The notes under the pieces: generated by a model | The model's input: the letters and a program-made list of their open reading frames with translations, nothing else | What the model was told of the DNA's origin: nothing | Databases searched by the model: none | Shown: in pieces, positions 4,534-46,161 of the stretch | Layout: each line of letters starts with the position of its first letter | How positions within the stretch are numbered: the stretch's first letter is position 1 | Position numbers and translations under genes: made by a program | IMG/VR virus record: IMGVR_UViG_3300046170_000519 | Coordinates: 124,001 to 188,000 of that record | DNA: 64,000 nucleotides | Reading direction: 5' to 3' (one strand)

Positions 4534-4728
4534 TTAATTAAGTTGTTCAAAAGTTTCTTTATTGCAAAACTTATTTAGTTTTGTGCCATCACTATCAATA
4601 GCTTTTAATACATAGCGAACTCTAGTAGATCCATCTTTGTTAGTTTTCTCTAACTTAGAAGCTTGCACTTCTTCAGATGGAATTTTTACTTTAGATTTTT
4701 TTTTAACATTATAAAATTCTATATGCAT
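4534..4728 (-). CDS. small basic protein, CC1/DUF5679-like putative DNA-binding protein
   Basis: 64 aa, Lys-rich; IEFYNVKKK...TxKDG...RYVLKA..DGTKLxKF pattern. Confidence 0.55.
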   Translation of the reverse strand: MHIEFYNVKKKSKVKIPSEEVQASKLEKTNKDGSTRVRYVLKAIDSDGTKLNKFCNKETFEQLN

Positions 4729-4737
4729 GATTAATAA

Positions 4738-4742
4738 TACAC
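4738..4742 (-). promoter_or_regulatory. GTGTA motif (putative late promoter)
   Basis: Minus strand TTTTTTTGTGTATTATTAATCATG upstream of the 4728 ATG. Confidence 0.45.
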
Positions 4743-4765
4743 AAAAAAATAGAAAAATAGAAATT

Positions 4766-5185: not shown

Positions 5186-5191
5186 AAGCTA

Positions 5192-6205: not shown

Positions 6206-6230
6206 ATATTATATATTCGTTTGAAAATGT

Positions 6231-6259
6231 ATTATAGATTATTTTTTTATTAAAGTCAA
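6231..6259 (-). promoter_or_regulatory. sigma70-type promoter for nrdB-dut
   Basis: TTGACT (6259-6254), 17-nt spacer, TATAAT (6236-6231). Confidence 0.8.
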
Positions 6260-6262
6260 CAA

Positions 6263-20078: not shown

Positions 20079-23000
20079 TTAGTTCGTACAGTTGTATAAA
20101 ATTTCGTAATTAAAAGTTGTGGAATAAATAGTCGTTAAACCATTTGTTGTAGTTATGGTATTTTCGCTGTAAGAAATAGAGGTTTCAATCAAATAAGATT
20201 CGATACCATCTCTAGATCCACATAAGTTTATAACATCTTTTTCTGTTGGAGCCCTAGGATCTAAGCTGGGATGTTGAGAAGAACTCTGTTGTGTATTGCT
20301 GATTTCGAATGTACTATAATTAGAGGAAGATGGATCTAATACAGGAATAGCTTTAGGAACATTAAGAACATTATGGTGGCAAGGAGAATCTTGAACGCAA
20401 TCACTACATTTCGAATCATTCAAGCAAGCTGTAATTGAAACTTTATGATAACCATCTTTTTCAAAATCTATAGTATAATACTCTAAATTGAAATCAGAAG
20501 TTGATGTTGGCGTTGATTCATGATGCGGTAATTCTATATTAAAATTATATTTTTCATAATTATTAGATTTTACTTCTTTTATTAAATTAGATGTATTATT
20601 TTCATATACTTTTATATCCGCTTCATCAATGGCATTTAAATCTCCATCATGAAATAATCCGTAGTAGTAACTTTTATCTTCTACGTCCATAGTTCCATCA
20701 CAAATACTGCAAGCTTCGGAATTAGAAAGGATTGGTAATAAATCAGTAAAGTGATATTGATTATTATAATCTTTTCCAAAAAATCTTACATGTAAAGAAG
20801 CTTGAGAATAAGGTATAAATGCTGCAGCTCCTCGATTCGCCGCAACTTTTAATAGTCGAGGATATGATATATCAGTTGAAGTATGCTGTAATACTCCGTT
20901 AAAAGCTGGCGAACCATACACTCTAAATGGATTTGAATTATTAACAAAAACGATTAAACCTGGATTTCCTCCAGCATTAATGCATATAACATTACTGATT
21001 GAGACTCCTTGAAGAGGAGAATCACACTCAACATACATTTCTAAAGGTAATTCTTCTGATGGAGTTGGGGTATGAGTGTCTGTGTCTGTTAATGTAGTAG
21101 TCGGAGTTTCACAAGAAACACAGCATTGATCGCAAGAATCTTGTGGGTAAACATCATTAGCTTTAGGAGTATCAGTTGAATCTGCAGGAATAACTTTATT
21201 AATTAATAAATTATTGTTAAATTCCTGAGAATTTTTGAATTGACCTGCAGAACCTCCACAAGAAGAAGCTGAAACCGCATTACAGAAAGAAACATCAACT
21301 TGAGAGTCAAATACATAACATTTAGAGGTTGAGAAATCTTTAATAACACTTGGGAAATCAGCATAAGATTCAACTCCTATATAAGCTGGTAATGTAGCAG
21401 AAAGGCAGTTGCTAGGCTCAGAACCATCTCCACAGGTGTATGAGCAACTAATATACTTACCGCAGAGTCCAAAGCCACAAGTCTCAGTTTCAGTTTGAGT
21501 CTGAGTTTCTGTCTCTGTTGCTGTTTGAGTCTGAGTTTCTGTCTCTGTTGCTGTTTGAGTCTGAGTTTCTGTCTCTGTTGCTGTCTGAGTCTGAGTTCTT
21601 GTTTGAGTGTTTGTAGCTGTCTGGGTCTCAACCTCTGTTTCTGTCTCTGTCTCGGTTTGAGTGTTTGTTGATGTCTCGGTCTGAGTTCGTGTTTGAGTCT
21701 TTGTTACTGTCTGGGTCTCAGTCTCTGTTTCAGTCTCTGTCTCGGTCTGAGTTTGTGTTTGAGTCTTTGTTGCTGTCTGGGTCTCAGTCTCTGTTTCAGT
21801 CTCTGTCTCGGTCTGAGTTTGTGTTTTAGTCTGAGTCTGAGTTTCTGTCTCGGTCTGAGTTTGTGTTTGAGTCTTTGTTGCTGTCTGGGTCTCAGTCTCT
21901 GTTTCAGTCTCTGTCTCGGTCTGAGTTTGTGTTTCAGTCTGAGTCTGAGTTTCTGTCTCGGTCTGAGTTCGTGTTTGAGTCTTTGTTGCTGTCTGGGTCT
22001 CAGTCTCTGTTTCAGTCTCTGCCTCGGTCTGAGTTTGTGTTTCAGTCTGAGTTTGTGTTTCAGTCTGAGTCTGAGTTTCTGTCTCGGTCTGAGTTCGTGT
22101 TTGAGTCTTTGTTGCTGTCTGGGTCTCAGTCTCTGTTTCAGTCTCTGTCTCGGTCTGAGTTTGTGTTTCAGTCTGAGTCTGAGTTTCTGTCTCGGTCTGA
22201 GTTCGTGTTTGAGTCTTTGTTGCTGTCTGGGTCTCAGTCTCTGTTTCAGTCTCTGTCTCGGTCTGAGTTTGTGTTTCAGTCTGAGTCTGAGTTTCTGTCT
22301 CGGTCTGAGTCTGAGTTTCTGTCTCGGTCTGAGTCTGAGTTTCTGTCTCGGTCTGAGTCTGAGTTTGTGTTTCTGTCTCGGTCTGAGTCTGAGTTTGTGT
22401 TTCTGTCTCGGTCTGAGTCTGAGTTTCTGTCTCGGTCTGAGTCTGAGTTTGTGTTTCAGTCTGAGTTTGTGTTTCTGTCTCGGTCTGAGTTTGTGTTTCT
22501 GTCTCGGTCTGAGTCTGAGTTTCTGTCTCGGTCTGAGTCTGAGTTTGTGTTTCAGTCTGAGTCTGAGTTTGTGTTTCAGTCTGAGTCTGAGTTTGTGTTT
22601 CAGTCTGAGTCTGAGTTTGTGTTTCAGTCTGAGTCTGAGTTTCAGTAAAGGTATTTGTTTCAGTCTGAGTCTCTGTTTCAGTCTCTGTCTCGGTCTGAGT
22701 TTGTGTTTCAGTAAAGGTATTTGTTTCAGTCTGAGTCTGAGTTTCTGTCTCGGTCTGAGTCTGGGTTTCTGTCTCGGTCTGAGTCTGAGTTTCTGTTTCA
22801 GTCTGAGTCTGAGTTTGTGTTTCAGTCTGAGTCTGAGTTTCTGTTTCAGTCTGAGTCTGAGTTTCTGTTTCAGTCTGAGTCTGAGTTTCAGTAAAGGTAT
22901 TTGTTTCAGTCTGAGTCTGAGTTTCTGTCTCGGTCTGAGTCTGAGTTTGTGTTTCAGTCTGAGTCTGAGTTTCTGTCTCGGTCTGAGTCTGAGTTTGTGT

Positions 23001-26000
23001 TTCAGTCTGAGTCTGAGTCTCTGTTTCAGTCTGAGTCTGAGTTTCTGTCTCGGTCTGAGTCTGGGTTTCTGTCTCGGTCTGAGTCTGAGTCTCTGTTTCA
23101 GTCTGAGTCTGAGTTTCTGTCTCGGTCTGAGTCTGAGTTTGTGTTTCTGTCTCGGTCTGAGTCTGAGTTTCTGTCTCGGTCTGAGTCTGAGTTTCTGTTT
23201 CAGTCTGAGTCTGAGTTTCTGTTTCAGTCTGAGTCTGAGTCTGAGTTTGTGTTTCAGTAAAGGTATTTGTTTCAGTCTGAGTCTGAGTTTCTGTCTCGGT
23301 CTGAGTCTGAGTTTGTGTTTCTGTCTCGGTCTGAGTCTGAGTTTCTGTCTCGGTCTGAGTCTGAGTTTGTGTTTCTGTCTCGGTCTGAGTCTGAGTTTGT
23401 GTTTCTGTCTCGGTCTGAGTCTGAGTTTCTGTCTCGGTCTGAGTCTGAGTTTGTGTTTCTGTCTCGGTCTGAGTCTGAGTTTGTGTTTCTGTCTCGGTCT
23501 GAGTCTGAGTTTGTGTTTCTGTCTCGGTCTGAGTCTGAGTTTGTGTTTCTGTCTCGGTCTGAGTCTGAGTTTGTGTTTCTGTCTCGGTCTGAGTCTGAGT
23601 CTCTGTTTCAGTCTCTGTCTCGGTCTGAGTTTGTGTTTCAGTCTGAGTCTGAGTTTCTGTCTCGGTCTGAGTCTGAGTTTCTGTCTCGGTCTGAGTCTGA
23701 GTTTCTGTCTCGGTCTGAGTCTGAGTTTGTGTTTCTGTCTCGGTCTGAGTCTGAGTTTGTGTTTCTGTCTCGGTCTGAGTCTGAGTTTCTGTCTCGGTCT
23801 GAGTCTGAGTTTGTGTTTCAGTCTGAGTTTGTGTTTCTGTCTCGGTCTGAGTTTGTGTTTCTGTCTCGGTCTGAGTCTGAGTTTCTGTCTCGGTCTGAGT
23901 CTGAGTTTGTGTTTCAGTCTGAGTCTGAGTTTGTGTTTCAGTCTGAGTCTGAGTTTGTGTTTCAGTCTGAGTCTGAGTTTGTGTTTCAGTCTGAGTCTGA
24001 GTTTCAGTAAAGGTATTTGTTTCAGTCTGAGTCTCTGTTTCAGTCTCTGTCTCGGTCTGAGTTTGTGTTTCAGTAAAGGTATTTGTTTCAGTCTGAGTCT
24101 GAGTTTCTGTCTCGGTCTGAGTCTGGGTTTCTGTCTCGGTCTGAGTCTGAGTTTCTGTTTCAGTCTGAGTCTGAGTTTGTGTTTCAGTCTGAGTCTGAGT
24201 TTCTGTTTCAGTCTGAGTCTGAGTTTCTGTTTCAGTCTGAGTCTGAGTTTCAGTAAAGGTATTTGTTTCAGTCTGAGTCTGAGTTTCTGTCTCGGTCTGA
24301 GTCTGAGTTTGTGTTTGAGTCTGAGTCTGAGTTTCTGTCTCGGTCTGAGTCTGAGTTTGTGTTTCAGTCTGAGTCTGAGTCTCTGTTTCAGTCTGAGTCT
24401 GAGTTTCTGTCTCGGTCTGAGTCTGGGTTTCTGTCTCGGTCTGAGTCTGAGTCTCTGTTTCAGTCTGAGTCTGAGTTTCTGTCTCGGTCTGAGTCTGAGT
24501 CTGAGTTTCTGTCTCGGTCTGAGTCTGAGTTTCTGTCTCGGTCTGAGTCTGAGTTTCTGTCTCGGTCTGAGTCTGAGTTTCTGTTTCAGTCTGAGTCTGA
24601 GTTTCTGTTTCAGTCTGAGTCTGAGTCTGAGTTTGTGTTTCAGTAAAGGTATTTGTTTCAGTCTGAGTCTGAGTTTCTGTCTCGGTCTGAGTCTGAGTTT
24701 GTGTTTCTGTCTCGGTCTGAGTCTGAGTTTGTGTTTCTGTCTCGGTCTGAGTTTCTGTCTCGGTCTGAGTCTGAGTTTCTGTCTCGGTCTGAGTCTGAGT
24801 TTGTGTTTCTGTCTCGGTCTGAGTCTGAGTTTCTGTCTCGGTCTGAGTCTGAGTTTGTGTTTCTGTTTCAGTCTGAGTTTGTGTTTCTGTCTCGGTCTGA
24901 GTCTGAGTCTGAGTTTCTGTTTCAGTCTGAGTCTGAGTTTCTGTCTCGGTCTGAGTCTGAGTTTCTGTTTCAGTCTGAGTCTGAGTTTCTGTCTCGGTCT
25001 GAGTCTGAGTCTGAGTTTCTGTCTCGGTCTGAGTTTGTGTTTCTGTCTCGGTCTGAGTCTGAGTTTCTGTCTCGGTCTGAGTCTGAGTTTGTGTTTCAGT
25101 CTGAGTCTGAGTTTGTGTTTCAGTCTGAGTCTGAGTTTGTGTTTCAGTCTGAGTCTGAGTTTGTGTTTCAGTCTGAGTCTGAGTTTCAGTAAAGGTATTT
25201 GTTTCAGTCTGAGTCTCTGTTTCAGTCTCTGTCTCGGTCTGAGTTTGTGTTTCAGTAAAGGTATTTGTTTCAGTCTGAGTCTGAGTTTCTGTCTCGGTCT
25301 GAGTCTGGGTTTCTGTCTCGGTCTGAGTCTGAGTTTCTGTTTCAGTCTGAGTCTGAGTTTGTGTTTCAGTCTGAGTCTGAGTTTCTGTCTCGGTCTGAGT
25401 CTGAGTTTGTGTTTCAGTCTGAGTTTGTGTTTCTGTCTCGGTCTGAGTTTGTGTTTCTGTCTCGGTCTGAGTCTGAGTTTCTGAGTCTGAGTTTGTGTTT
25501 GAGTCTGAGTCTGAGTTTCTGTCTCGGTCTGAGTCTGAGTTTGTGTTTCAGTCTGAGTCTGAGTCTCTGTTTCAGTCTGAGTCTGAGTTTCTGTCTCGGT
25601 CTGAGTCTGGGTTTCTGTCTCGGTCTGAGTCTGAGTCTCTGTTTCAGTCTGAGTCTGAGTTTCTGTCTCGGTCTGAGTCTGAGTCTGAGTTTCTGTCTCG
25701 GTCTGAGTCTGAGTTTCTGTCTCGGTCTGAGTCTGAGTTTCTGTTTCAGTCTGAGTCTGAGTTTCTGTTTCAGTCTGAGTCTGAGTCTGAGTTTGTGTTT
25801 CAGTAAAGGTATTTGTTTCAGTCTGAGTCTGAGTTTCTGTCTCGGTCTGAGTCTGAGTTTGTGTTTCTGTCTCGGTCTGAGTCTGAGTTTGTGTTTCTGT
25901 CTCGGTCTGAGTTTCTGTCTCGGTCTGAGTCTGAGTTTCTGTCTCGGTCTGAGTCTGAGTTTGTGTTTCTGTCTCGGTCTGAGTCTGAGTTTCTGTCTCG

Positions 26001-29000
26001 GTCTGAGTCTGAGTTTGTGTTTCTGTTTCAGTCTGAGTTTGTGTTTCTGTCTCGGTCTGAGTCTGAGTCTGAGTTTCTGTTTCAGTCTGAGTCTGAGTTT
26101 CTGTCTCGGTCTGAGTCTGAGTTTCTGTTTCAGTCTGAGTCTGAGTTTCTGTCTCGGTCTGAGTCTGAGTCTGAGTTTCTGTCTCGGTCTGAGTCTGAGT
26201 CTGAGTTTCTGTTTCGGTCTGAGTCTGAGTTTCTGTCTCGGTCTGAGTCTGAGTCTGAGTTTGTGTTTCAGTAAAGGTATTTGTTTCAGTCTGAGTCTGA
26301 GTTTCTGTCTCGGTCTGAGTCTGAGTCTGAGTTTCTGTCTCGGTCTGAGTCTGAGTCTCTGTTTGAGTCTGAGTACCAGTTTCTGTTTCAGTCTGAGTCT
26401 GAGTTTGTGTTTCAGTCTGAGTCTGAGTCTGAGTTTCTGTTTCAGTCTGAGTCTGAGTTTCTGTCTCGGTCTGAGTCTGAGTCTGAGTTTGTGTTTCAGT
26501 AAAGGTATTTGTTTCAGTCTGAGTCTGAGTTTCTGTCTCGGTCTGAGTCTGAGTTTGTGTTTCTGTCTCGGTCTGAGTCTGAGTTTGTGTTTCTGTCTCG
26601 GTCTGAGTCTGAGTTTGTGTTTCTGTCTCGGTCTGAGTCTGAGTTTGTGTTTCTGTCTCGGTCTGAGTCTGAGTTTGTGTTTCTGTCTCGGTCTGAGTCT
26701 GAGTTTGTGTTTCTGTCTCGGTCTGAGTCTGAGTTTGTGTTTCTGTCTCGGTCTGAGTCTGAGTCTCTGTTTCAGTCTCTGTCTCGGTCTGAGTTTGTGT
26801 TTCAGTCTGAGTCTGAGTTTCTGTCTCGGTCTGAGTCTGAGTTTCTGTCTCGGTCTGAGTCTGAGTTTCTGTCTCGGTCTGAGTCTGAGTTTCTGTCTCG
26901 GTCTGAGTCTGAGTTTCTGTCTCGGTCTGAGTCTGAGTTTGTGTTTCTGTCTCGGTCTGAGTCTGAGTTTGTGTTTCTGTCTCGGTCTGAGTCTGAGTTT
27001 CTGTCTCGGTCTGAGTCTGAGTTTGTGTTTCAGTCTGAGTTTGTGTTTCTGTCTCGGTCTGAGTTTGTGTTTCTGTCTCGGTCTGAGTTTGTGTTTCTGT
27101 CTCGGTCTGAGTCTGAGTTTCTGTCTCGGTCTGAGTCTGAGTTTGTGTTTCAGTCTGAGTCTGAGTTTGTGTTTCAGTCTGAGTCTGAGTTTGTGTTTCA
27201 GTCTGAGTCTGAGTTTGTGTTTCAGTCTGAGTCTGAGTTTCAGTAAAGGTATTTGTTTCAGTCTGAGTCTCTGTTTCAGTCTCTGTCTCGGTCTGAGTTT
27301 GTGTTTCAGTAAAGGTATTTGTTTCAGTCTGAGTCTGAGTTTCTGTCTCGGTCTGAGTCTGGGTTTCTGTCTCGGTCTGAGTCTGAGTTTCTGTTTCAGT
27401 CTGAGTCTGAGTTTGTGTTTCAGTCTGAGTCTGAGTTTCTGTTTCAGTCTGAGTCTGAGTTTCTGTTTCAGTCTGAGTCTGAGTTTCAGTAAAGGTATTT
27501 GTTTCAGTCTGAGTCTGAGTTTCTGTCTCGGTCTGAGTCTGAGTTTGTGTTTCAGTCTGAGTCTGAGTTTCTGTCTCGGTCTGAGTCTGAGTTTGTGTTT
27601 CAGTCTGAGTCTGAGTCTCTGTTTCAGTCTGAGTCTGAGTTTCTGTCTCGGTCTGAGTCTGGGTTTCTGTCTCGGTCTGAGTCTGAGTCTCTGTTTCAGT
27701 CTGAGTCTGAGTTTCTGTCTCGGTCTGAGTCTGAGTTTGTGTTTCTGTCTCGGTCTGAGTCTGAGTTTCTGTCTCGGTCTGAGTCTGAGTTTCTGTTTCA
27801 GTCTGAGTCTGAGTTTCTGTTTCAGTCTGAGTCTGAGTCTGAGTTTGTGTTTCAGTAAAGGTATTTGTTTCAGTCTGAGTCTGAGTTTCTGTCTCGGTCT
27901 GAGTCTGAGTTTGTGTTTCTGTATCGGTCTGAGTCTGAGTTTCTGTCTCGGTCTGAGTCTGAGTTTGTGTTTCTGTCTCGGTCTGAGTCTGAGTTTGTGT
28001 TTCTGTCTCGGTCTGAGTCTGAGTTTCTGTCTCGGTCTGAGTCTGAGTCTGAGTTTGTGTTTCAGTAAAGGTATTTGTTTCAGTCTGAGTCTGAGTTTCT
28101 GTCTCGGTCTGAGTCTGAGTTTGTGTTTCTGTCTCGGTCTGAGTCTGAGTTTGTGTTTCTGTCTCGGTCTGAGTCTGAGTTTGTGTTTCTGTCTCGGTCT
28201 GAGTCTGAGTTTGTGTTTCTGTCTCGGTCTGAGTCTGAGTTTCTGTCTCGGTCTGAGTCTGAGTTTGTGTTTCAGTCTGAGTTTGTGTTTCTGTCTCGGT
28301 CTGAGTTTGTGTTTCTGTCTCGGTCTGAGTCTGAGTTTCTGTCTCGGTCTGAGTCTGAGTTTGTGTTTCAGTCTGAGTCTGAGTTTGTGTTTCAGTCTGA
28401 GTCTGAGTTTGTGTTTCAGTCTGAGTCTGAGTTTGTGTTTCAGTCTGAGTCTGAGTTTCAGTAAAGGTATTTGTTTCAGTCTGAGTCTCTGTTTCAGTCT
28501 CTGTCTCGGTCTGAGTTTGTGTTTCAGTAAAGGTATTTGTTTCAGTCTGAGTCTGAGTTTCTGTCTCGGTCTGAGTCTGGGTTTCTGTCTCGGTCTGAGT
28601 CTGAGTTTCTGTTTCAGTCTGAGTCTGAGTTTGTGTTTCAGTCTGAGTCTGAGTTTCTGTTTCAGTCTGAGTCTGAGTTTCTGTTTCAGTCTGAGTCTGA
28701 GTTTCAGTAAAGGTATTTGTTTCAGTCTGAGTCTGAGTTTCTGTCTCGGTCTGAGTCTGAGTTTGTGTTTGAGTCTGAGTCTGAGTTTCTGTCTCGGTCT
28801 GAGTCTGAGTTTGTGTTTCAGTCTGAGTCTGAGTCTCTGTTTCAGTCTGAGTCTGAGTTTCTGTCTCGGTCTGAGTCTGGGTTTCTGTCTCGGTCTGAGT
28901 CTGAGTCTCTGTTTCAGTCTGAGTCTGAGTTTCTGTCTCGGTCTGAGTCTGAGTCTGAGTTTCTGTCTCGGTCTGAGTCTGAGTTTCTGTCTCGGTCTGA

Positions 29001-32000
29001 GTCTGAGTTTCTGTTTCAGTCTGAGTCTGAGTTTCTGTTTCAGTCTGAGTCTGAGTCTGAGTTTGTGTTTCAGTAAAGGTATTTGTTTCAGTCTGAGTCT
29101 GAGTTTCTGTCTCGGTCTGAGTCTGAGTTTGTGTTTCTGTCTCGGTCTGAGTCTGAGTTTGTGTTTCTGTCTCGGTCTGAGTTTCTGTCTCGGTCTGAGT
29201 CTGAGTTTCTGTCTCGGTCTGAGTCTGAGTTTGTGTTTCTGTCTCGGTCTGAGTCTGAGTTTCTGTCTCGGTCTGAGTCTGAGTTTGTGTTTCTGTTTCA
29301 GTCTGAGTTTGTGTTTCTGTCTCGGTCTGAGTCTGAGTCTGAGTTTCTGTTTCAGTCTGAGTCTGAGTTTCTGTCTCGGTCTGAGTCTGAGTTTCTGTTT
29401 CAGTCTGAGTCTGAGTTTCTGTCTCGGTCTGAGTCTGAGTTTCTGTCTCGGTCTGAGTCTGAGTTTCTGTCTCGGTCTGAGTCTGAGTTTCTGTCTCGGT
29501 CTGAGTCTGAGTTTCTGTCTCGGTCTGAGTCTGAGTTTCTGTCTCGGTCTGAGTCTGAGTTTCTGTCTCGGTCTGAGTCTGAGTTTGTGTTTCTGTCTCG
29601 GTCTGAGTCTGAGTTTGTGTTTCTGTCTCGGTCTGAGTCTGAGTCTGAGTTTGTGTTTCAGTCTGAGTCTGAGTTTCTGTCTCGGTCTGAGTCTGAGTCT
29701 GAGTTTGTGTTTCAGTCTGAGTCTGAGTTTCTGTTTCAGTAAAGGTATTTGTTTCAGTCTGAGTCTGAGTTTCTGTCTCGGTCTGAGTCTGAGTTTGTGT
29801 TTCTGTCTCGGTCTGAGTCTGAGTTTGTGTTTCTGTCTCGGTCTGAGTCTGAGTTTGTGTCTCGGTCTGAGTCTGAGTTTGTGTTTCTGTTTCAGTCTGA
29901 GTTTGTGTTTCTGTCTCGGTCTGAGTTTGAGTTTGTGTTTCTGTCTCGGTCTGAGTCTGAGTCTGAGTTTCTGTTTCAGTCTGAGTCTGAGTTTGTGTTT
30001 CTGTCTCGGTCTGAGTCTGAGTTTCTGTCTCGGTCTGAGTCTGAGTTTGTGTTTCTGTCTCGGTCTGAGTCTGAGTTTGTGTTTCTGTTTCAGTCTGAGT
30101 CTGAGTTTCAGTAAAGGTGTTTGTTCAGTCTGAGTCTGAGTTTGTGTCTCAGTCTGAGTCGCTGTTCAGTCTCTGTTTCAGTCTGAGTCTGAGTCTGAGT
30201 TTGTGTTTCATGTCTCGGTCTGAGTCTGAGTTTCTGTCTCGGTCTGAGTCTGAGTTTGTGTTTCTGTTTCAGTCTGAGTTTGTGTTTCTGTCTCTGTCTG
30301 AGTCTGAGTTTGTGTTTCAGTCTGAGTCTGAGTTTCTGTCTCGGTCTGAGTCTGAGTTTCTGTCTCGGTCTGAGTCTGAGTTTGTGTTTCAGTCTGAGTT
30401 TGTGTTTCTGTCTCGGTCTGAGTCTGAGTTTGTGTTTCAGTCTGAGTCTGAGTTTCTGTTTCAGTCTGAGTCTGAGTTTCTGTCTCGGTCTGAGTCTGAG
30501 TTTCTGTCTCGGTCTGAGTCTGAGTTTCTGTCTCGGTCTGAGTCTGAGTCTGAGTCTGAGTTTCTGTCTCGGTCTGAGTCTGAGTTTGTGTTTCAGTAAA
30601 GGTATTTGTTTCAGTCTGAGTCTGAGTTTCTGTTTCAGTCTGAGTCTGAGTCTGAGTTTGTGTTTCAGTAAAGGTATTTGTTTCAGTCTGAGTCTGAGTT
30701 TCTGTCTCGGTCTGAGTCTGAGTTTGTGTTTCTGTCTCGGTCTGAGTCTGAGTTTCTGTCTCGGTCTGAGTCTGAGTTTCTGTCTCGGTCTGAGTCTGAG
30801 TTTCTGTTTCAGTCTGAGTCTGAGTTTCTGTCTCGGTCTGAGTCTGAGTTTCTGTTTCAGTCTGAGTCTGAGTTTCTGTCTCGGTCTGAGTCTGAGTCTG
30901 AGTTTCTGTCTCGGTCTGAGTCTGAGTCTGAGTTTCTGTCTCGGTCTGAGTCTGAGTTTGTGTTTCAGTCTGAGTCTGAGTTTGTGTCTCGGTCTGAGTC
31001 TGAGTCTGAGTTTCTGTTTCAGTCTGAGTCTGAGTCTGAGTTTGTGTTTCAGTCTGAGTCTGAGTTTCTGTTTCAGTCTGAGTCTGAGTTTCTGTCTCGG
31101 TCTGAGTCTGAGTTTCTGTCTCGGTCTGAGTCTGAGTTTCTGTCTCGGTCTGAGTCTGAGTTTCTGTTTCAGTCTGAGTCTGAGTTTCTGTCTCGGTCTG
31201 AGTCTGAGTTTGTGTTTCAGTCTGAGTCTGAGTTTGTGTTTCAGTCTGAGTCTGAGTCTGAGTTTGTGTTTCTGTTTCAGTCTGAGTTTCTGTCTCGGTC
31301 TGAGTCTGAGTTTCTGTCTCGGTCTGAGTCTGAGTTTCTGTCTCGGTCTGAGTCTGAGTTTCTGTCTCGGTCTGAGTCTGAGTTTGTGTTTCTGTTTCAG
31401 TCTGAGTTTGTGTTTCTGTCTCGGTCTGAGTCTGAGTTTCTGTCTCGGTCTGAGTCTGAGTCTGAGTTTCTGTTTCAGTCTGAGTCTGAGTTTCTGTTTC
31501 AGTCTGAGTCTGAGTTTGTGTTTCAGTAAAGGTATTTGTTTCAGTCTGAGTCTGAGTTTCTGTCTCGGTCTGAGTCTGAGTTTGTGTTTCTGTCTCGGTC
31601 TGAGTCTGAGTTTGTGTTTCTGTCTCGGTCTGAGTCTGAGTTTGTGTTTCTGTCTCGGTCTGAGTCTGAGTTTGTGTTTCTGTCTCGGTCTGAGTCCGAG
31701 TTTGTGTTTCTGTTTCAGTCTGAGTTTCTGTCTCGGTCTGAGTTTCTGTCTCGGTCTGAGTCTGAGTTTGTGTTTCTGTCTCGGTCTGAGTCTGAGTTTC
31801 TGTCTCGGTCTGAGTCTGAGTTTGTGTTTCTGTTTCAGTCTGAGTTTGTGTTTCAGTCTGAGTCTGAGTTTCTGTCTCGGTCTGAGTCTGAGTTTGTGTT
31901 TCTGTTTCAGTCTGAGTTTGTGTTTCTGTCTCGGTCTGAGTCTGAGTTTCTGTCTCGGTCTGAGTCTGAGTTTGTGTTTCTGTTTCAGTCTGAGTTTGTG

Positions 32001-35000
32001 TTTCTGTCTCGGTCTGAGTCTGAGTTTCTGTCTCGGTCTGAGTCTGAGTTTGTGTTTCTGTTTCAGTCTGAGTTTGTGTTTCTGTCTCGGTCTGAGTCTG
32101 AGTCTGAGTTTCTGTCTCGGTCTGAGTCTGAGTTTCTGTTTCAGTCTGAGTCTGAGTTTCTGTCTCGGTCTGAGTCTGAGTCTGAGTTTCTGTCTCGGTC
32201 TGAGTCTGAGTTTCTGTCTCGGTCTGAGTTTGTGTTTCAGTCTGAGTCTCTGTTTCAGTCTCTGTTTCAGTCTGAGTCTGAGTTTGTGTTTCTGTCTCGG
32301 TCTGAGTCTGAGTTTCTGTCTCGGTCTGAGTCTGAGTTTGTGTTTCTGTTTCAGTCTGAGTTTGTGTTTCTGTCTCGGTCTGAGTCTGAGTTTCAGTAAA
32401 GGTATTTGTTTCAGTCTGAGTCTGAGTTTGTGTTTCTGTCTCGGTCTGAGTCTGAGTTTCTGTCTCGGTCTGAGTCTCAGTTTGTGTTTCTGTCTCGGTC
32501 TGAGTCTGAGTTTCTGTCTCGGTCTGAGTCTGAGTTTCTGTCTCGGTCTGAGTCTGAGTTTGTGTTTCTGTCTCGGTCTGAGTCTGAGTCTGAGTTTCTG
32601 TTTCAGTCTGAGTCTGAGTTTGTGTTTCTGTCTCGGTCTGAGTCTGAGTTTCAGTAAAGGTATTTGTTTCAGTCTGAGTCTGAGTCTGAGTTTGTGTTTC
32701 AGTAAAGGTATTTGTTTCAGTCTGAGTCTGAGTTTCTGTCTCGGTCTGAGTCTGAGTTTGTGTTTCTGTCTCGGTCTGAGTCTGAGTTTGTGTTTCTGTC
32801 TCGGTCTGAGTCTGAGTTTCTGTCTCGGTCTGAGTCTGAGTTTGTGTTTCTGTTTCAGTCTGAGTTTGTGTTTCTGTCTCGGTCTGAGTCTGAGTTTGTG
32901 TTTCTGTCTCGGTCTGAGTCTGAGTTTGTGTTTCTGTCTCGGTCTGAGTCTGAGTTTGTGTTTCAGTCTGAGTCTGAGTTTCTGTCTCGGTCTGAGTCTG
33001 AGTTTCTGTCTCGGTCTGAGTCTGAGTTTGTGTTTCAGTCTGAGTTTGTGTTTCTGTCTCGGTCTGAGTCTGAGTTTGTGTTTCAGTCTGAGTCTGAGTT
33101 TCTGTTTCAGTCTGAGTCTGAGTTTCTGTTTCAGTCTGAGTCTGAGTTTCTGTCTCGGTCTGAGTCTGAGTTTCTGTCTCGGTCTGAGTCTGAGTTTCTG
33201 TCTCGGTCTGAGTCTGAGTCTGAGTCTGAGTTTCTGTCTCGGTCTGAGTCTGAGTTTGTGTTTCAGTAAAGGTATTTGTTTCAGTCTGAGTCTGAGTTTC
33301 TGTTTCAGTCTGAGTCTGAGTCTGAGTTTGTGTTTCAGTAAAGGTATTTGTTTCAGTCTGAGTCTGAGTTTGTGTTTCTGTCTCGGTCTGAGTCTGAGTT
33401 TCTGTCTCGGTCTGAGTCTGAGTTTCTGTTTCAGTCTGAGTCTGAGTTTCTGTCTCGGTCTGAGTCTGAGTTTCTGTTTCAGTCTGAGTCTGAGTTTCTG
33501 TCTCGGTCTGAGTCTGAGTCTGAGTTTCTGTCTCGGTCTGAGTCTGAGTCTGAGTTTCTGTCTCGGTCTGAGTCTGAGTTTGTGTTTCAGTCTGAGTCTG
33601 AGTTTGTGTCTCGGTCTGAGTCTGAGTCTGAGTTTCTGTTTCAGTCTGAGTCTGAGTTTGTGTTTCAGTCTGAGTCTGAGTTTCTGTTTCAGTCTGAGTC
33701 TGAGTTTCTGTCTCGGTCTGAGTCTGAGTTTCTGTCTCGGTCTGAGTCTGAGTTTCTGTCTCGGTCTGAGTCTGAGTCTGAGTTTGTGTTTCAGTAAAGG
33801 TATTTGTTTCAGTCTGAGTCTGAGTTTCTGTTTCAGTCTGAGTCTGAGTTTCAGTAAAGGTATTTGTTTCAGTCTGAGTCTCTGTTTCAGTCTCTGTCTC
33901 GGTCTGAGTTTGTGTTTCAGTCTGAGTCTGAGTTTCTGTTTCAGTCTGAGTCTGAGTTTCTGTTTCAGTCTGAGTCTGAGTTTCAGTAAAGGTATTTGTT
34001 TCAGTCTGAGTCTGAGTTTGTGTTTCTGTCTCGGTCTGAGTCTGAGTTTGTGTTTCTGTCTCGGTCTGAGTCTGAGTCTGAGTTTCTGTTTCAGTCTGAG
34101 TCTGAGTTTGTGTTTCTGTCTCGGTCTGAGTCTGAGTTTCAGTAACTGAGTTTCTGTCTCGGTCTGAGTCTGAGTCTGAGTTTGTGTTTCAGTAAAGGTA
34201 TTTGTTTCAGTCTGAGTCTGAGTTTCTGTCTCGGTCTGAGTCTGAGTTTGTGTTTCTGTCTCGGTCTGAGTCTGAGTTTGTGTTTCTGTCTCGGTCTGAG
34301 TCTGAGTTTGTGTTTCTGTCTCGGTCTGAGTCTGAGTTTGTGTTTCTGTCTCGGTCTGAGTCTGAGTTTGTGTTTCTGTCTCGGTCTGAGTCTGAGTTTC
34401 TGTCTCGGTCTGAGTCTGAGTTTGTGTTTCAGTCTGAGTTTGTGTTTCTGTCTCGGTCTGAGTTTGTGTTTCTGTCTCGGTCTGAGTCTGAGTTTCTGTC
34501 TCGGTCTGAGTCTGAGTTTGTGTTTCAGTCTGAGTCTGAGTTTGTGTTTCAGTCTGAGTCTGAGTTTGTGTTTCAGTCTGAGTCTGAGTTTGTGTTTCAG
34601 TCTGAGTCTGAGTTTCAGTAAAGGTATTTGTTTCAGTCTGAGTCTCTGTTTCAGTCTCTGTCTCGGTCTGAGTTTGTGTTTCAGTAAAGGTATTTGTTTC
34701 AGTCTGAGTCTGAGTTTCTGTCTCGGTCTGAGTCTGGGTTTCTGTCTCGGTCTGAGTCTGAGTTTCTGTTTCAGTCTGAGTCTGAGTTTGTGTTTCAGTC
34801 TGAGTCTGAGTTTCTGTTTCAGTCTGAGTCTGAGTTTCTGTTTCAGTCTGAGTCTGAGTTTCAGTAAAGGTATTTGTTTCAGTCTGAGTCTGAGTTTCTG
34901 TTTCAGTCTGAGTCTGAGTCTGAGTTTGTGTTTCAGTAAAGGTATTTGTTTCAGTCTGAGTCTGAGTTTGTGTTTCTGTCTCGGTCTGAGTCTGAGTTTC

Positions 35001-38000
35001 TGTCTCGGTCTGAGTCTGAGTTTCTGTTTCAGTCTGAGTCTGAGTTTCTGTCTCGGTCTGAGTCTGAGTTTCTGTTTCAGTCTGAGTCTGAGTTTCTGTC
35101 TCGGTCTGAGTCTGAGTCTGAGTTTCTGTCTCGGAGTCTGAGTCTGAGTTTCTGTCTCGGTCTGAGTCTGAGTTTGTGTTTCAGTCTGAGTCTGAGTTTG
35201 TGTCTCGGTCTGAGTCTGAGTCTGAGTTTCTGTTTCAGTCTGAGTCTGAGTTTGTGTTTCAGTCTGAGTCTGAGTTTCTGTTTCAGTCTGAGTCTGAGTT
35301 TCTGTCTCGGTCTGAGTCTGAGTTTCTGTCTCGGTCTGAGTCTGAGTTTCTGTCTCGGTCTGAGTCTGAGTCTGAGTTTGTGTTTCAGTAAAGGTATTTG
35401 TTTCAGTCTGAGTCTGAGTTTCTGTTTCAGTCTGAGTCTGAGTTTCAGTAAAGGTATTTGTTTCAGTCTGAGTCTCTGTTTCAGTCTCTGTCTCGGTCTG
35501 AGTTTGTGTTTCAGTAAAGGTATTTGTTTCAGTCTGAGTCTGAGTTTCTGTCTCGGTCTGAGTCTGGGTTTCTGTCTCGGTCTGAGTCTGAGTTTCTGTT
35601 TCAGTCTGAGTCTGAGTTTGTGTTTCAGTCTGAGTCTGAGTTTCTGTTTCAGTCTGAGTCTGAGTTTCTGTTTCAGTCTGAGTCTGAGTTTCAGTAAAGG
35701 TATTTGTTTCAGTCTGAGTCTGAGTTTGTGTTTCAGTCTGAGTCTGAGTTTGTGTTTCAGTCTGAGTCTGAGTTTGTGTTTCAGTCTGAGTCTGAGTTTC
35801 TGTCTCGGTCTGAGTCTGAGTTTCTGTCTCGGTCTGAGTCTGAGTTTCTGTCTCGGTCTGAGTCTGAGTCTGAGTTTCTGTCTCGGTCTGAGTCTGAGTC
35901 TCTGTTTCAGTCTGAGTCTGAGTTTGTGTTTCAGTCTGAGTCTGAGTTTCTGTTTCAGTCTGAGTCTGAGTTTCTGTCTCGGTCTGAGTCTGAGTTTCTG
36001 TCTCGGTCTGAGTCTGAGTTTCTGTCTCGGTCTGAGTCTGAGTCTGAGTTTGTGTTTCAGTAAAGGTATTTGTTTCAGTCTGAGTCTGAGTTTCTGTCTC
36101 GGTCTGAGTCTGAGTTTGTGTTTCTGTCTCGGTCTGAGTCTGAGTTTGTGTTTCTGTCTCGGTCTGAGTCTGAGTTTGTGTTTCTGTCTCGGTCTGAGTC
36201 TGAGTTTGTGTTTCTGTCTCGGTCTGAGTCTGAGTTTCTGTCTCGGTCTGAGTCTGAGTTTGTGTTTCAGTCTGAGTTTGTGTTTCTGTCTCGGTCTGAG
36301 TTTGTGTTTCTGTCTCGGTCTGAGTCTGAGTTTCTGTCTCGGTCTGAGTCTGAGTTTGTGTTTCAGTCTGAGTCTGAGTTTGTGTTTCAGTCTGAGTCTG
36401 AGTTTGTGTTTCAGTCTGAGTCTGAGTTTGTGTTTCAGTCTGAGTCTGAGTTTCAGTAAAGGTATTTGTTTCAGTCTGAGTCTCTGTTTCAGTCTCTGTC
36501 TCGGTCTGAGTTTGTGTTTCAGTAAAGGTATTTGTTTCAGTCTGAGTCTGAGTTTCTGTCTCGGTCTGAGTCTGGGTTTCTGTCTCGGTCTGAGTCTGAG
36601 TTTCTGTTTCAGTCTGAGTCTGAGTTTGTGTTTCAGTCTGAGTCTGAGTTTCTGTTTCAGTCTGAGTCTGAGTTTCTGTTTCAGTCTGAGTCTGAGTTTC
36701 AGTAAAGGTATTTGTTTCAGTCTGAGTCTGAGTTTCTGTCTCGGTCTGAGTCTGAGTTTGTGTTTGAGTCTGAGTCTGAGTTTCTGTCTCGGTCTGAGTC
36801 TGAGTTTGTGTTTCAGTCTGAGTCTGAGTCTCTGTTTCAGTCTGAGTCTGAGTTTCTGTCTCGGTCTGAGTCTGGGTTTCTGTCTCGGTCTGAGTCTGAG
36901 TCTCTGTTTCAGTCTGAGTCTGAGTTTCTGTCTCGGTCTGAGTCTGAGTTTGTGTTTCTGTCTCGGTCTGAGTCTGAGTTTGTGTTTCTGTCTCGGTCTG
37001 AGTCTGAGTTTGTGTTTCTGTTTCAGTCTGAGTTTCTGTCTCGGTCTGAGTCTGAGTTTCTGTCTCGGTCTGAGTCTGAGTTTCTGTCTCGGTCTGAGTC
37101 TGAGTTTCTGTCTCGGTCTGAGTTTCTGTCTCGGTCTGAGTCTGAGTTTGTGTTTCTGTCTCGGTCTGAGTCTGAGTTTGTGTTTCGGTCTGAGTCTGAG
37201 TTTGTGTTTCTGTTTCAGTCTGAGTTTGTGTTTCAGTCTGAGTCTGAGTTTCTGTCTCGGTCTGAGTCTGAGTTTGTGTTTCTGTTTCAGTCTGAGTTTG
37301 TGTTTCTGTCTCGGTCTGAGTCTGAGTTTGTGTTTCTGTCTCGGTCTGAGTCTGAGTTTGTGTTTCTGTCTCGGTCTGAGTCTGAGTTTGTGTTTCTGTC
37401 TCGGTCTGAGTCTGAGTTTGTGTTTCTGTCTCGGTCTGAGTCTGAGTTTGTGTTTCTGTCTCGGTCTGAGTCCGAGTTTGTGTTTCTGTTTCAGTCTGAG
37501 TTTCTGTCTCGGTCTGAGTTTCTGTCTCGGTCTGAGTCTGAGTTTGTGTTTCTGTCTCGGTCTGAGTCTGAGTTTCTGTCTCGGTCTGAGTCTGAGTTTG
37601 TGTTTCTGTTTCAGTCTGAGTTTGTGTTTCAGTCTGAGTCTGAGTTTCTGTCTCGGTCTGAGTCTGAGTTTGTGTTTCTGTTTCAGTCTGAGTTTGTGTT
37701 TCTGTCTCGGTCTGAGTCTGAGTTTCTGTCTCGGTCTGAGTCTGAGTTTGTGTTTCTGTTTCAGTCTGAGTTTGTGTTTCTGTCTCGGTCTGAGTCTGAG
37801 TTTCTGTCTCGGTCTGAGTCTGAGTTTGTGTTTCTGTTTCAGTCTGAGTTTGTGTTTCTGTCTCGGTCTGAGTCTGAGTCTGAGTTTCTGTCTCGGTCTG
37901 AGTCTGAGTTTCTGTTTCAGTCTGAGTCTGAGTTTCTGTCTCGGTCTGAGTCTGAGTCTGAGTTTCTGTCTCGGTCTGAGTCTGAGTTTCTGTCTCGGTC

Positions 38001-40755: not shown

Positions 40756-41703
40756 CTAGCCTTTGACTTTGAATGTTGCAGTGTATCCAAGATTACCCGC
40801 TCCAAACTTAGGTGATTGAGATAAATATAAAGTAGCTCCCTCTACTAAAGTTAAAGGAGAGGTGAAATCAGATTTTGAGTTTTTTTCATCTAATGGGTGT
40901 GTCCATGATTTTTCTGATTTTGTTCCATCTGCAGCTGATTGATTTAATGTTATTGTTGATTCTGTATTAGAACCTCCTGTTGTAAATATAGAAGCTGTAA
41001 CACTTAAAACTTTTTTGTTATGCCAGGAGGAGGGGACAACTATGATTGCATCTTCAAAATTAAAATTATCAATAAGTTCAGAAGCTGGAACATTATTTAT
41101 TGCAAAATACTCTTCTTCATTGGGGTATTTTTTCCAATTAGCTTCATCACGAGTCCAGACTCCGCCGTTTCCGTTTGATTCACCTTCTACTTTATGATTA
41201 ATCCAAGCATTTATTAAAGCTTGTGAAGGAGCATTATCCCCAGAAACTTGAGCATTGTACTGAGTAACAGAGATATCTCCAACAGCTGCATTATATAAAG
41301 TTTCATAATCATCAATCATAAATTGATAAGACTGGTTTTTCTCTATTACATAGACTACCATGCCTAATTTTAAACGACCAGAACTCATTAAATCTCTGTT
41401 TAGCTCTAATAAAGCAGGAGTAGTTATTATTTCAACACAGGGAGGGACCTCATTCCTGTTACAGCTTCTTGGAACTTCTTCTGTTCCACCAGGTGTATAT
41501 ATTAATGGTATAAAATTAAGAGGATCATCAAGTGGAATGCCTGTGACTCCATTAGTAGTACTATAAGTAATATTGTTTAAATGATAATATTCTTGTAAAC
41601 CACCAATGAGAGATGTCCCAGAAGTTACTCCAGTTTGAGAACTCATGGAAAAAGAATCTGCAACTTGTTTTGCTGTTAAATGTATGTGATCTGAAAAACT
41701 CAT
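40756..41703 (-). CDS. hypothetical structural protein with tail-fibre-type RLKLGMVVYVIE motif
   Basis: 315 aa; LMSSGRLKLGMVVYVIEKNQSYQF resembles a motif recurrent in phage tail-fibre N-termini; operon with the stalk genes. Confidence 0.6.
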   Translation of the reverse strand: MSFSDHIHLTAKQVADSFSMSSQTGVTSGTSLIGGLQEYYHLNNITYSTTNGVTGIPLDDPLNFIPLIYTPGGTEEVPRSCNRNEVPPCVEIITTPALLELNRDLMSSGRLKLGMVVYVIEKNQSYQFMIDDYETLYNAAVGDISVTQYNAQVSGDNAPSQALINAWINHKVEGESNGNGGVWTRDEANWKKYPNEEEYFAINNVPASELIDNFNFEDAIIVVPSSWHNKKVLSVTASIFTTGGSNTESTITLNQSAADGTKSEKSWTHPLDEKNSKSDFTSPLTLVEGATLYLSQSPKFGAGNLGYTATFKVKG

Positions 41704-43239: not shown

Positions 43240-43264
43240 TTTTCGAATAAATACTAAAAAAGAA

Positions 43265-43284
43265 TGTGTAAATTGTTTTTACAC
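43265..43284. promoter_or_regulatory. inverted repeat TGTGTAAA-N5-TTTACACA carrying the GTGTA motif on both strands
   Basis: aatgtgtaaattgtttttacacaaa in the gap upstream of 43239. Confidence 0.5.
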
Positions 43285-43325
43285 AAAAAAATATAGTTTT
43301 GTTTATTTTTTGCTAAATACATAAT

Positions 43326-46160: not shown

Positions 46161-46161
46161 G

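What the first reader, a model, noticed from the sequence alone, without database searches (positions are those of the whole stretch)
25470..35140. About six frameshifting indels in the giant array: assembly error or slippage-based phase variation
Seen: apparent deletions relative to the consensus unit at ~35134 (4 nt, tctg), ~34150 (22 nt) and ~25480 (10 nt between tctg microhomologies), plus three small indels clustered with substitutions at 30123-30210. As assembled, translation from 40744 switches at ~35134 into a strongly basic (R/K-L-Q)n frame and stops at 34139, losing the head. The shorter stalk genes have no frameshifts, suggesting selection for frame. The 30.1-30.3 kb cluster looks like low-quality consensus. 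The microhomology-flanked deletions could be real slipped-strand alleles switching the head on or off.
Basis: partly seen in the sequence, partly recalled or inferred. Interest (0 to 1): 0.6.

Follow-up and report, generated by a model that had tools for sequence, protein, structure and literature searches.

The report
Assembly frameshifts in giant phage gene
The six reading-frame breaks in this 19-kb repeat array are really in the sequence, but they are most likely errors of this one assembly: two other assemblies of the same marine jumbo phage read straight through three of them, so the real object is probably one intact gene of about 7,000 codons.

Summary
On the minus strand a (Thr-Glu/Gln)n array (21481-40699) changes frame six times: at 35133/35134, 34145/34146, 30210, about 30165, about 30124 and 25480-25483. 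As assembled, the ORF from ATG 40744 stops at 34139.

The phase-variation reading is not supported. The window is a 205,857-bp seawater jumbo-phage contig. Two sister assemblies of the same strain have no mismatch to it over more than 33 kb of shared DNA outside the array interior. They part from it exactly at three junctions and stay in the Thr frame: +4 nt at 35134, a different in-frame structure at 34146, and +142 nt at 25480.

The 30.1-30.2 kb patch holds three single-base indels. Two are the array's only TTT-to-TT contractions, against 335 intact sites. It also has two unique substitutions and lies near the array's centre.

All breaks lie at least 4 kb from either unique flank. The repeat unit is 6 nt, so slippage would keep the frame. 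Relatives carry leader, Thr-X array and head in one ORF.

Best explanation: repeat-collapse and consensus errors in a long-read assembly (0.72).

The parts
20079..40744 (-). The giant gene as it would run if in frame: 20,666 nt here and about 21.1 kb after adding the 420 nt seen in sister assemblies. It has a conserved leader, a (Thr-Glu/Gln)n array of about 6,400 codons, and a C-terminal head. In this assembly it is broken into seven frame segments.
   Evidence: single-ORF architecture in relatives
40700..40744 (-). Start codon and conserved N-terminal leader, [15 protein letters not shown]. The ATG lies 11 nt after the stop of the upstream gene.
   Evidence: The leader MLSVFAR is kept in 10 diverged relatives (upstream gene 43-60% identical) and in P0129. 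The same 11-nt spacing is seen in L036.
21481..40699 (-). Thr-X dipeptide array: T 3,198, Q 1,697 and E 1,340 of 6,415 codons, with an NTFT punctuation 58 times. 82% of it lies in exact repeats of 150 nt or more, the longest 982 nt.
35133..35134 (-). Break 1: 4 nt are missing (AGAC on the minus strand), and reading passes into the basic frame. Sister assembly L015 is identical for the 16,570 nt before this point and carries the 4 nt.
34145..34146 (-). Break 2: an out-of-register join (minus strand CTCAG|TTACTGA). L015 is identical for the 989 nt before it, then continues in frame with a different arrangement (498 nt against 224 nt here).
34139..34141 (-). TGA stop that ends the ORF as assembled (2,201 codons). 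It is made by the novel junction sequence of break 2.
30121..30212 (-). Low-quality patch holding breaks 3-5: +1 at 30210, -1 in a T3 run at about 30165, and -1 in a T3 run at about 30124. It also has the unique codons GCG (30162) and AAC (30121). It lies 8.7 kb from one edge of the array and 10.3 kb from the other.
25480..25483 (-). Break 6: a 142-nt deletion compared with sister assembly L026, flanked by 4 nt of microhomology. L026 is identical for 7,071 nt on one side and 1,341 nt on the other, and is in frame.
20079..21480 (-). C-terminal head. It has a Cys-rich proximal part (from CGFGLCGKY) and a mostly beta distal part. The distal part corresponds roughly to the only start-codon ORF here, 20079-21038 (319 aa). 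It is an orphan domain with 4 relatives among 1.84 billion representatives.
40756..41703 (-). Conserved upstream partner gene (315 aa). It was used as the anchor to find relatives and sister assemblies.
41713..48831 (-). Three unbroken paralogues (508, 944 and 889 aa), each built as N-terminal domain, (T-E/Q)n array and C-terminal domain.
   Evidence: In the 944-aa gene, the array length differs from L016 by 324+60+432 nt, all multiples of 6.

Best explanation
The frame breaks are most likely artefacts of this one metagenome assembly (JGI 3300046170, contig Ga0494229_00544), not features of the phage.

The array is a 19-kb stretch in which 82% of positions lie in exact repeats of 150 nt or more. 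Only long reads can span it. Near the unique flanks, reads are anchored and the sequence is reliable. In the interior, the assembler collapsed or mis-joined repeat copies out of register, giving -4, a net -274 and -142 nt. Near the centre it left a short unpolished patch with three single-base indels.

The true gene is then one open reading frame of about 7,000 codons. It has a 15-residue conserved leader, about 6,400 residues of alternating Thr-Glu/Gln, and a 467-residue Cys-rich head.

Shown: where the breaks are, their absence from sister assemblies at three sites, and the single-ORF architecture in relatives. Inferred: that long reads were used, that the cause is collapse or consensus error, and what the protein does. 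My guess at its role is a long, acidic, possibly O-glycosylated tether that holds a binding head away from the virion.
For: (1) Sister assembly L015 (JGI 3300046168). It is identical to the window for 16,570 nt, and the first difference is exactly the 4 nt at 35134. It is then identical for 989 nt and diverges exactly at 34146. Its Thr frame is unbroken over all 3,329 codons held. Its gene call of 4,897 codons runs open to the contig end.

(2) Sister assembly L026 (JGI 3300046171). It has no mismatch over 17,071 nt up to 25484. It then carries 142 nt more, followed by 1,341 identical nt. Its Thr frame is unbroken into the head.

(3) All three structural differences are losses in the window, as repeat collapse would give.

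(4) The central patch holds the only two TTT-to-TT contractions among 337 such sites, the only TTCATG, and 2 of the 7 rare codons in 18 kb, all within 92 nt. Residual indels after polishing of long-read virome assemblies are documented (PMC6487183).

(5) Everything outside the array interior is clean. ORFs of 2,980, 4,048 and 3,302 codons are intact, and there are no mismatches to the sister contigs.

(6) All breaks lie at least 4.0 kb from the head-side edge of the array and at least 5.35 kb from the other edge. Both sister contigs end inside the array, and every short-read contig breaks at its edges.

(7) As assembled, about 13 kb (21039-34138) has no minus-strand ORF with a start codon. Yet it keeps perfect T-[EQ] periodicity, which does not fit real decay.

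(8) The head is conserved in an older sample, with 7 synonymous and 5 replacement codon changes in 563 codons. In the relatives P0129 and L013 it sits in one ORF with the leader and array.
Against: - On 1.2 kb it returned only 43-78-nt Logan contigs, none of which can count as bridging a junction.
- In that call, the bin over junction 2 has non-zero depth in all four runs, 4.6 in X13. Low-level presence of the junction in other samples therefore cannot be excluded.
- The sequencing platform of the source sample is not on record, so 'long-read assembly' is an inference.
- Polishing with multi-mapped reads could in principle have erased a real 4-nt deletion in a sister assembly. This could not create the 142-nt and 274-nt differences.
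- The 30.1-30.2 kb patch is not covered by the parts of the sister contigs that could be fetched. The open 4,897-codon call in L015's record excludes only the +1 insertion, which gives an immediate TGA. It does not exclude the -1 shifts, because the basic frame stays open.
- The two assemblies also differ in frame: by 30 nt at 32856, and again near 31250. The array interior is therefore either truly variable or unreliable in more than one assembly.
Confidence: 0.72

Rival explanations
1. The out-of-frame forms are real molecules but not a switch. They would be deletion variants arising from instability of the array during replication, or chimeras made during library amplification. They were common enough in this one sample to enter the consensus. 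Genomes carrying them make a truncated stalk with a basic tail and no head.
For: The junctions are clean, with perfectly identical sequence for at least 1 kb on either side. Junction 25480 has 4 nt of microhomology. In-register length differences between assemblies show that these arrays do vary, or are at least hard to fix: 816 nt in the 944-aa gene and 30 nt in the giant array. The junction-2 bin has non-zero depth in four runs.
Against: This needs three to six independent out-of-register events in one consensus genome, while two samples of the same strain show none in the parts held. Long in-register homologies should outcompete 1-4 nt microhomologies by far. The three single-base indels are not slippage products of a 6-nt array.
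Confidence: 0.17
2. This is adaptive phase variation. Slipped-strand events in the array switch the head on and off in the phage population.
For: An in-frame form (sister samples) and an out-of-frame form (this contig) of the same strain both exist as assemblies. After a -1 shift the alternative frame stays open, so an OFF form would still make a long product.
Against: The unit is 6 nt (periods 24, 30 and 66), so unit slippage never changes frame. The differences are not whole units. One break would suffice for OFF, yet there are six, with a net shift that no single event reverses. No relative shows a comparable break. No reversible mechanism is apparent.
Confidence: 0.05
3. The gene is a true, fixed pseudogene in this phage lineage. 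The array is decaying and the head is no longer made, or is made only as the 319-aa ORF from ATG 21038.
For: An ATG-started 319-aa ORF covers the distal head. That distal domain exists as a stand-alone 302-aa gene in an unrelated contig (P0128).
Against: Sister assemblies with no mismatch elsewhere are in frame. There is no decay in the 13 kb downstream: 7 rare codons in 18 kb. The Cys-rich proximal head upstream of ATG 21038 is intact and conserved.
Confidence: 0.04
4. Programmed recoding: ribosomal frameshifting at the junctions restores the frame.
For: None beyond the existence of frame changes inside one gene.
Against: The junctions are absent from the same strain's other assemblies. They differ from one another in sequence and in direction (-1, -1, +1, -1, -1, -1). 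They are unique sequences and not conserved.
Confidence: 0.01

Closest known systems
Residual indel and repeat-collapse errors in long-read virome and metagenome assemblies (for example VirION; Warwick-Dugdale et al. 2019, PMC6487183)
   Same: Frame-breaking indels that shorten gene calls. They persist where short reads cannot be placed uniquely, and include single-base indels at short homopolymers. That paper reports 22.8 indels per 100 kb left after polishing.
   Different: Here the rest of the 206-kb contig is clean and only the interior of one 19-kb array is affected. Three of the six events are larger out-of-register losses (4, 142 and a net 274 nt), not base-calling errors.
Simple-sequence-repeat contingency loci (phase-variable genes of Haemophilus, Neisseria and Campylobacter; from my own knowledge)
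   Same: Tandem repeats inside a surface-protein gene, with frame changes that would switch off the distal part.
   Different: Those loci use units of 1, 2, 4, 5 or 7 nt and alleles that differ by whole units. Here the unit is 6 nt and the changes are not whole units.
Dipeptide-repeat stalks of Gram-positive adhesins (Ser-Asp repeats of the staphylococcal Clf/Sdr proteins, glycosylated by SdgA/SdgB; from my own knowledge)
   Same: A long array with a hydroxy amino acid at every second position. It is coded by a 6-nt unit, varies in length, and links an anchor to a globular binding domain. Glycosyltransferase genes occur in the same genome.
   Different: This one is Thr-Glu/Gln rather than Ser-Asp and is phage-encoded. 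The head is C-terminal, and there is no signal peptide or LPXTG motif. It is roughly 20 or more times longer. No sequence homology was tested or claimed.
Thr-X or Pro/Thr linkers of bacterial surface proteins (hits P0006-P0125)
   Same: The same low-complexity T-X pattern. This is the only thing that a word search with the array finds.
   Different: Those are short linkers between known domains in cellular proteins. None has the MLSVFAR leader or the head, so they share composition, not ancestry.
The phage's own gene family: orthologues P0129 (909 aa), the L013 gene (280 aa) and others
   Same: The leader MLSVFAR, a position 11 nt after the 315-aa partner gene, a Thr-X array, and a Cys-rich head starting CG[FY]G.C.
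   Different: Their arrays are about 50 to more than 600 residues, with other second residues (P, L, S, A, V, H). Here the array is about 6,400 residues of E/Q.

Membership tests
Slipped-strand (SSR) phase-variable locus | The repeat unit length is not a multiple of 3, so gain or loss of a unit changes the frame | tested here: not met
   The basic unit is 6 nt, with higher periods of 24, 30 and 66. The array translates as strict T-[EQ] dipeptides.
Slipped-strand (SSR) phase-variable locus | ON and OFF alleles differ by whole numbers of repeat units at one tract | tested here: not met
   The differences from in-frame sister assemblies are 4 nt, 142 nt and a complex net 274 nt. There are also three 1-nt indels, and the events are spread over four separate places.
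Slipped-strand (SSR) phase-variable locus | Both alleles coexist and recur within populations | tested here: inconclusive
   Logan contigs are 43-78 nt long and none bridges a junction. The junction pattern is not in other IMG/VR contigs.
Assembly or consensus artefact in a tandem array | Absent from independent assemblies of the same strain | tested here: met
   L015 and L026 are in frame at 35134, 34146 and 25480, with identical flanks. The 30.1-30.2 kb patch is not covered directly.
Assembly or consensus artefact in a tandem array | Confined to sequence that reads cannot place uniquely, with the rest of the contig clean | tested here: met
   82% of the array lies in exact repeats of 150 nt or more. 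All breaks are at least 4 kb from unique flanks. ORFs of 2,980-4,048 codons are intact elsewhere. There are no mismatches to sister contigs outside the array interior.
Assembly or consensus artefact in a tandem array | Error signature of the platform: single-base indels at homopolymers, clustered with substitutions | tested here: met
   Two T3-to-T2 contractions, the only ones among 337 sites, plus one inserted base and two unique codons within 92 nt.
Assembly or consensus artefact in a tandem array | Raw reads of the source sample contradict the consensus | not testable with these tools
   Only Logan contigs are served for these runs, and the one read-laying run is spent.
Programmed ribosomal frameshift | A conserved slippery site and stimulatory element at the shift, kept in relatives | tested here: not met
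   The junctions are absent from the same strain's other assemblies and from relatives. The six sites share no motif.
Phage leader / Thr-X / head gene family (defined here) | The MLSVFAR leader directly after the 315-aa partner gene, then a Thr-X array, then a Cys-rich head, all in one ORF | tested here: met
   Leader and synteny. The head is homologous to P0129 (E 7.5e-9 over residues 1-467) and to the L013 gene (E 3e-10). In this window the one-ORF condition fails only at the six breaks.

The most novel reading that the evidence does not exclude
The out-of-register deletions are real alleles circulating in the phage population. The same strain would then exist with the head attached (sister samples) and without it (this sample). 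In the second form the gene makes a 1,870-residue acidic Thr-Glu/Gln stalk ending in a 330-residue basic tail, a heritable on/off change of a virion appendage produced by instability of a giant array.

Separately, and more likely, the intact gene itself is unusual. It would be a protein of about 7,000 residues (10% of the genome) made almost wholly of Thr-Glu/Gln, in a phage that also encodes a Fringe-like glycosyltransferase, a GT2 enzyme, two carbohydrate sulfotransferases and nucleotide-sugar enzymes. That set suggests a mucin-like, O-glycosylated tether.
Probability: 0.12. Interest if true: 0.6.

Novelty: not a real feature. Interest (0 to 1): 0.22.

Why it matters
For the frameshifts themselves, the lesson is practical. 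Long tandem arrays in long-read virome contigs can carry out-of-register collapses and unpolished patches. These split a giant gene into fragments, and in this record they even led the gene caller to the wrong strand. Protein catalogues built from such contigs therefore miss or mis-state the largest phage genes. Comparing sister assemblies of the same population is a cheap way to detect this.

The gene beneath the artefact deserves attention for its own sake. A roughly 21-kb gene for a Thr-Glu/Gln tether with an orphan Cys-rich head would be among the largest phage genes. Its family shows array lengths from about 50 to about 6,400 residues, which suggests strong selection on the reach of a virion appendage in marine phages.

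Tried and rejected
As the tool's message suggested, a shorter part (34050-35250) was laid on four runs. It gave only 43-78-nt Logan contigs, no reported indels and no bridging record, so it is inconclusive.
- The search for related loci in viral contigs with the head and with the partner gene found no relatives. Exact scans of viral contigs for junction 1 and for the NTFT motif found nothing outside the own record.
- The genome search on L015 and L026, to reach the rest of those records, failed because the records are not held. The last 4.7 kb of L015's contig and the other end of L026's contig therefore could not be read.
- The listing of cluster members for the 2,201-aa and 2,306-aa products: not in the collection.
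- Pfam and PHROGs on the head, the partner gene and the paralogues gave no family. The word search with the head found nothing. The exhaustive search found 4 hits only.
- The word search with the array returned only unrelated Thr-X linkers.
- The AlphaFold2 model of the head from a 5-row alignment had mean pLDDT 39, so no fold search was made.
- The ESM Atlas feature search scored 0.77 or less and gave no lead.
- The NCLDV capsid family was absent, though that search's controls also found nothing. A tape-measure protein shows a tailed phage.
- The RNR search in cultured phages gave 47.5% identity at best, so there is no close cultured relative.
- A paper search for the sample identifiers found nothing.
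- I considered and rejected another genetic code as an explanation. The breaks are frame changes, not in-frame stops.
Full report
**What the window is.** The window is bases 124001-188000 of a 205,857-bp virus record that CheckV rates as complete. In the JGI collection it is contig Ga0494229_00544 of sample 3300046170. It is a tailed jumbo phage. It has a 3,302-residue tape-measure protein, both ribonucleotide reductase subunits and nucleotide-sugar enzymes. There is no NCLDV capsid hit and no close cultured relative; the best RNR identity is 47.5%. Twenty public runs hold it, mostly seawater metagenomes.

**The observation.** Tandem Repeats Finder reports one array from 21481 to 40485, with periods of 24, 30 and 66 built on a 6-nt unit. 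On the minus strand an ORF starts at ATG 40744. After a 15-residue leader it reads as strict Thr-Glu/Thr-Gln dipeptides.

Tracking which frame carries Thr at every second codon shows six switches, at these places:
- 35133/35134
- 34145/34146
- 30210
- about 30165
- about 30124
- 25480-25483

The details are as follows:
- At 35134, 4 nt are missing compared with a paralogue that is otherwise identical over 301 nt.
- At 34146 there is a novel join that also creates the TGA ending the assembled ORF at 34139.
- At 25480 there is the join GTTTCT|GAGTCT.
- The three changes at 30.1-30.2 kb are single bases: one inserted base and two TTT-to-TT contractions.

Each larger junction sequence is unique in the window. 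With the breaks stepped over, the array has 6,415 codons: 3,198 T, 1,697 Q, 1,340 E and 58 NTFT punctuations. Only seven rare codons occur in the inner 18 kb.

**It is one gene.** Thirteen metagenome contigs carry a homologue (43-94% identity) of the 315-aa gene at 40756-41703. In the ten whose sequence extends past that gene, the next gene opens with the same leader, MLSVFAR, followed by a Thr-X array. Two complete examples exist.
- In L013 the gene is only 280 residues: leader, about 50 residues of Thr-X, then a Cys-rich domain. That domain aligns with the start of the window's head (31% identity, E 3e-10).
- P0129 has 909 residues: leader, about 250 residues of Thr-X, then a domain matching the whole head (E 7.5e-9). 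It sits 11 nt after the partner gene, as here.

The start at 40744 and the head at 20079-21480 therefore belong to one gene, and the head needs the array to be in frame. The head is also nearly unchanged in an older sample, with 7 synonymous and 5 replacement codon differences in 563 codons.

**The decisive comparison.** Looking up where the flanking proteins are encoded gave two further long contigs of the same phage, from sister samples.

L015 (3300046168, 44,794 nt) ends inside the array.
- It is identical to the window for 16,570 nt, from 51703 down to 35134. The first difference is exactly the 4 nt that the window lacks.
- It is then identical for 989 nt and diverges exactly at 34146. From there it continues in frame with a different arrangement of repeat copies: 498 nt where the window has 224.
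- Its Thr frame is unbroken over all 3,329 codons held.
- Its gene call of 4,897 codons runs open to the contig end.

L026 (3300046171, 207,177 nt) also has a contig end inside the array.
- From the downstream genes up to 25484 it has no mismatch to the window over 17,071 nt.
- It then carries 142 nt that the window lacks, with 4 nt of microhomology at the join. Another 1,341 identical nt follow.
- Its Thr frame runs unbroken into the head.

So three of the six breaks are absent from independent assemblies of a population that is otherwise indistinguishable. All three are losses in the window.

**The central patch.** The parts of the sister contigs that could be fetched do not reach 30.1-30.2 kb. 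The internal evidence is nevertheless strong:
- TGTTCAG occurs only at 30122 and 30163, against 335 copies of TGTTTCAG.
- TTCATG occurs only at 30207.
- Two of the array's seven rare codons lie in the same 92 nt.
- The patch is 8.7 kb from one edge of the array and 10.3 kb from the other, which is where anchored long reads are fewest.
- The inserted base gives an immediate TGA in the Thr frame. The open 4,897-codon call in L015's record therefore argues against that insertion there. It does not exclude -1 shifts, because the basic frame stays open.

**Why an artefact is the best reading.**
- 82% of the array lies in exact repeats of 150 nt or more, the longest 982 nt. Every short-read contig stops at the array's edges. 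A contig that spans it must therefore come from long reads. This is an inference, because the platform is not on record.
- Outside the array interior the contig is clean. ORFs of 2,980, 4,048 and 3,302 codons are intact, and there are no mismatches to sister contigs.
- All breaks lie at least 4.0 kb from the head-side edge and at least 5.35 kb from the other edge.
- As assembled, 13 kb (21039-34138) has no minus-strand ORF with a start codon. Yet it shows no decay of the dipeptide pattern.
- Indels that survive polishing in long-read virome assemblies are documented (PMC6487183).

**Why not phase variation.**
- The unit is 6 nt, so slippage by whole units keeps the frame.
- Where array length differs between assemblies in the 944-aa paralogue, the differences are 324, 60 and 432 nt, all multiples of 6. 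One 30-nt in-frame difference is also seen in the giant array.
- The frame-breaking differences are 4, 142 and a net 274 nt, plus three single bases. They lie at four separate places, with a net shift that no single event could reverse.
- One break would be enough to switch the head off.

**What remains open.** The reads test failed. The 1.2-kb stretch drew only 43-78-nt Logan contigs, none of which can count as bridging a junction. The bin over junction 2 has some depth in all four runs, 4.6 in X13, and this cannot be interpreted. Real out-of-frame molecules in the source sample are therefore not excluded. They could be array-instability variants or amplification chimeras. I give this about 0.17, and an adaptive switch about 0.05.

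**What the gene probably does (inference).** The head is an orphan, with no Pfam or PHROG family and four relatives among 1.84 billion representatives. Its model was too poor to use, with mean pLDDT 39. Its distal half occurs as a stand-alone gene elsewhere.

Three neighbouring paralogues have the same plan of domain, (T-E/Q)n array and domain. The genome also encodes these enzymes:
- a GT2 glycosyltransferase, two Sulfotransfer_2 enzymes and a Fringe-like glycosyltransferase;
- epimerases/dehydratases and a UDP-glucose dehydrogenase next to the cluster.

The most likely role is a very long, acidic, perhaps O-glycosylated tether that carries a binding head away from the virion. In function it would resemble the Ser-Asp stalks of staphylococcal adhesins. 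That comparison is a resemblance drawn from memory, not a tested membership.

**Verdict.** The frame breaks are most probably not a real feature of the phage (0.72). Interest in the frameshifts is low. The underlying gene of about 7,000 codons is the thing worth following.

Noticed in passing
L039 (G000:C1:75000-83000): 812-1534, 4123-4788, 5679-6269, 6922-7623; window 48907-50764 and 55288-57040: The phage encodes a GT2 glycosyltransferase, two Sulfotransfer_2 enzymes and a Fringe-like glycosyltransferase. Next to the Thr-X gene cluster it also has two NAD-dependent epimerases/dehydratases, a UDP-glucose dehydrogenase and a nucleotide-sugar epimerase. Together these could O-glycosylate and sulfate the Thr arrays, giving mucin-like fibres. 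This is untested.
   Followed up: partly
window 43326-46160 compared with L016:6360-8378: The 944-aa paralogue is 672 aa in another sample's 78-kb contig. The window has 324+60+432 nt more, all multiples of 6, plus one substitution. This is either true in-register length polymorphism of the array or a short-read collapse.
   Followed up: partly
L025 (own record), locus 1-8361, equal to window plus-strand ORFs 21693-25484 and 25265-30133: In the source record, the public gene calls inside the array lie on the wrong strand (products of 1,263 and 1,568 aa). They are a side effect of the frame breaks and of the array being open in several frames.
   Followed up: no
window 6263-18409 (-): A 4,048-codon ORF directly downstream of the cluster has an N-terminal LysM domain and its own tandem repeats (periods 15, 66 and 195 at 12.6-13.1, 15.0-15.4 and 17.4-17.9 kb). 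It is unbroken and identical in L026.
   Followed up: partly
L037:9714-19622 (G000 195713-205621): The tape-measure protein has 3,302 residues, which by the usual rule of about 0.15 nm per residue implies a tail of roughly 0.5 micrometre. The four ORFs after it (1,067, 546, 837 and 513 aa) have no PHROG match.
   Followed up: no
window 46162-48831 (-), C-terminal part: The 889-aa paralogue ends with two near-identical copies of a module of about 95 residues (LEWTSDPGQWNSFFSSGPRFVQA...), an internal duplication of its head.
   Followed up: no
L035:2796-3704 (P0128): The distal half of the head exists as a stand-alone 302-aa gene in an unrelated 4.5-kb contig, with an opposite-strand gene upstream. 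The head is therefore modular. The window's ATG at 21038 lies near the equivalent boundary.
   Followed up: partly
window 35103-35220 in run X18 (table 5): One Logan contig of a 2018 biofilm metagenome skips 116 nt here. Adding the 4 nt that the window lacks at 35134 makes this 120 nt, a whole number of 6-nt units. This fits an in-frame reference, but the shorter side of the joint is only 24 nt, so it is weak.
   Followed up: no
L004-L014, L036: Among relatives, the second residue of the Thr-X array differs by lineage (E/Q here; P/L/S/H, A/E or V/P elsewhere). Array length ranges from about 50 to more than 600 residues. The leader MLSVFAR stays fixed.
   Followed up: partly
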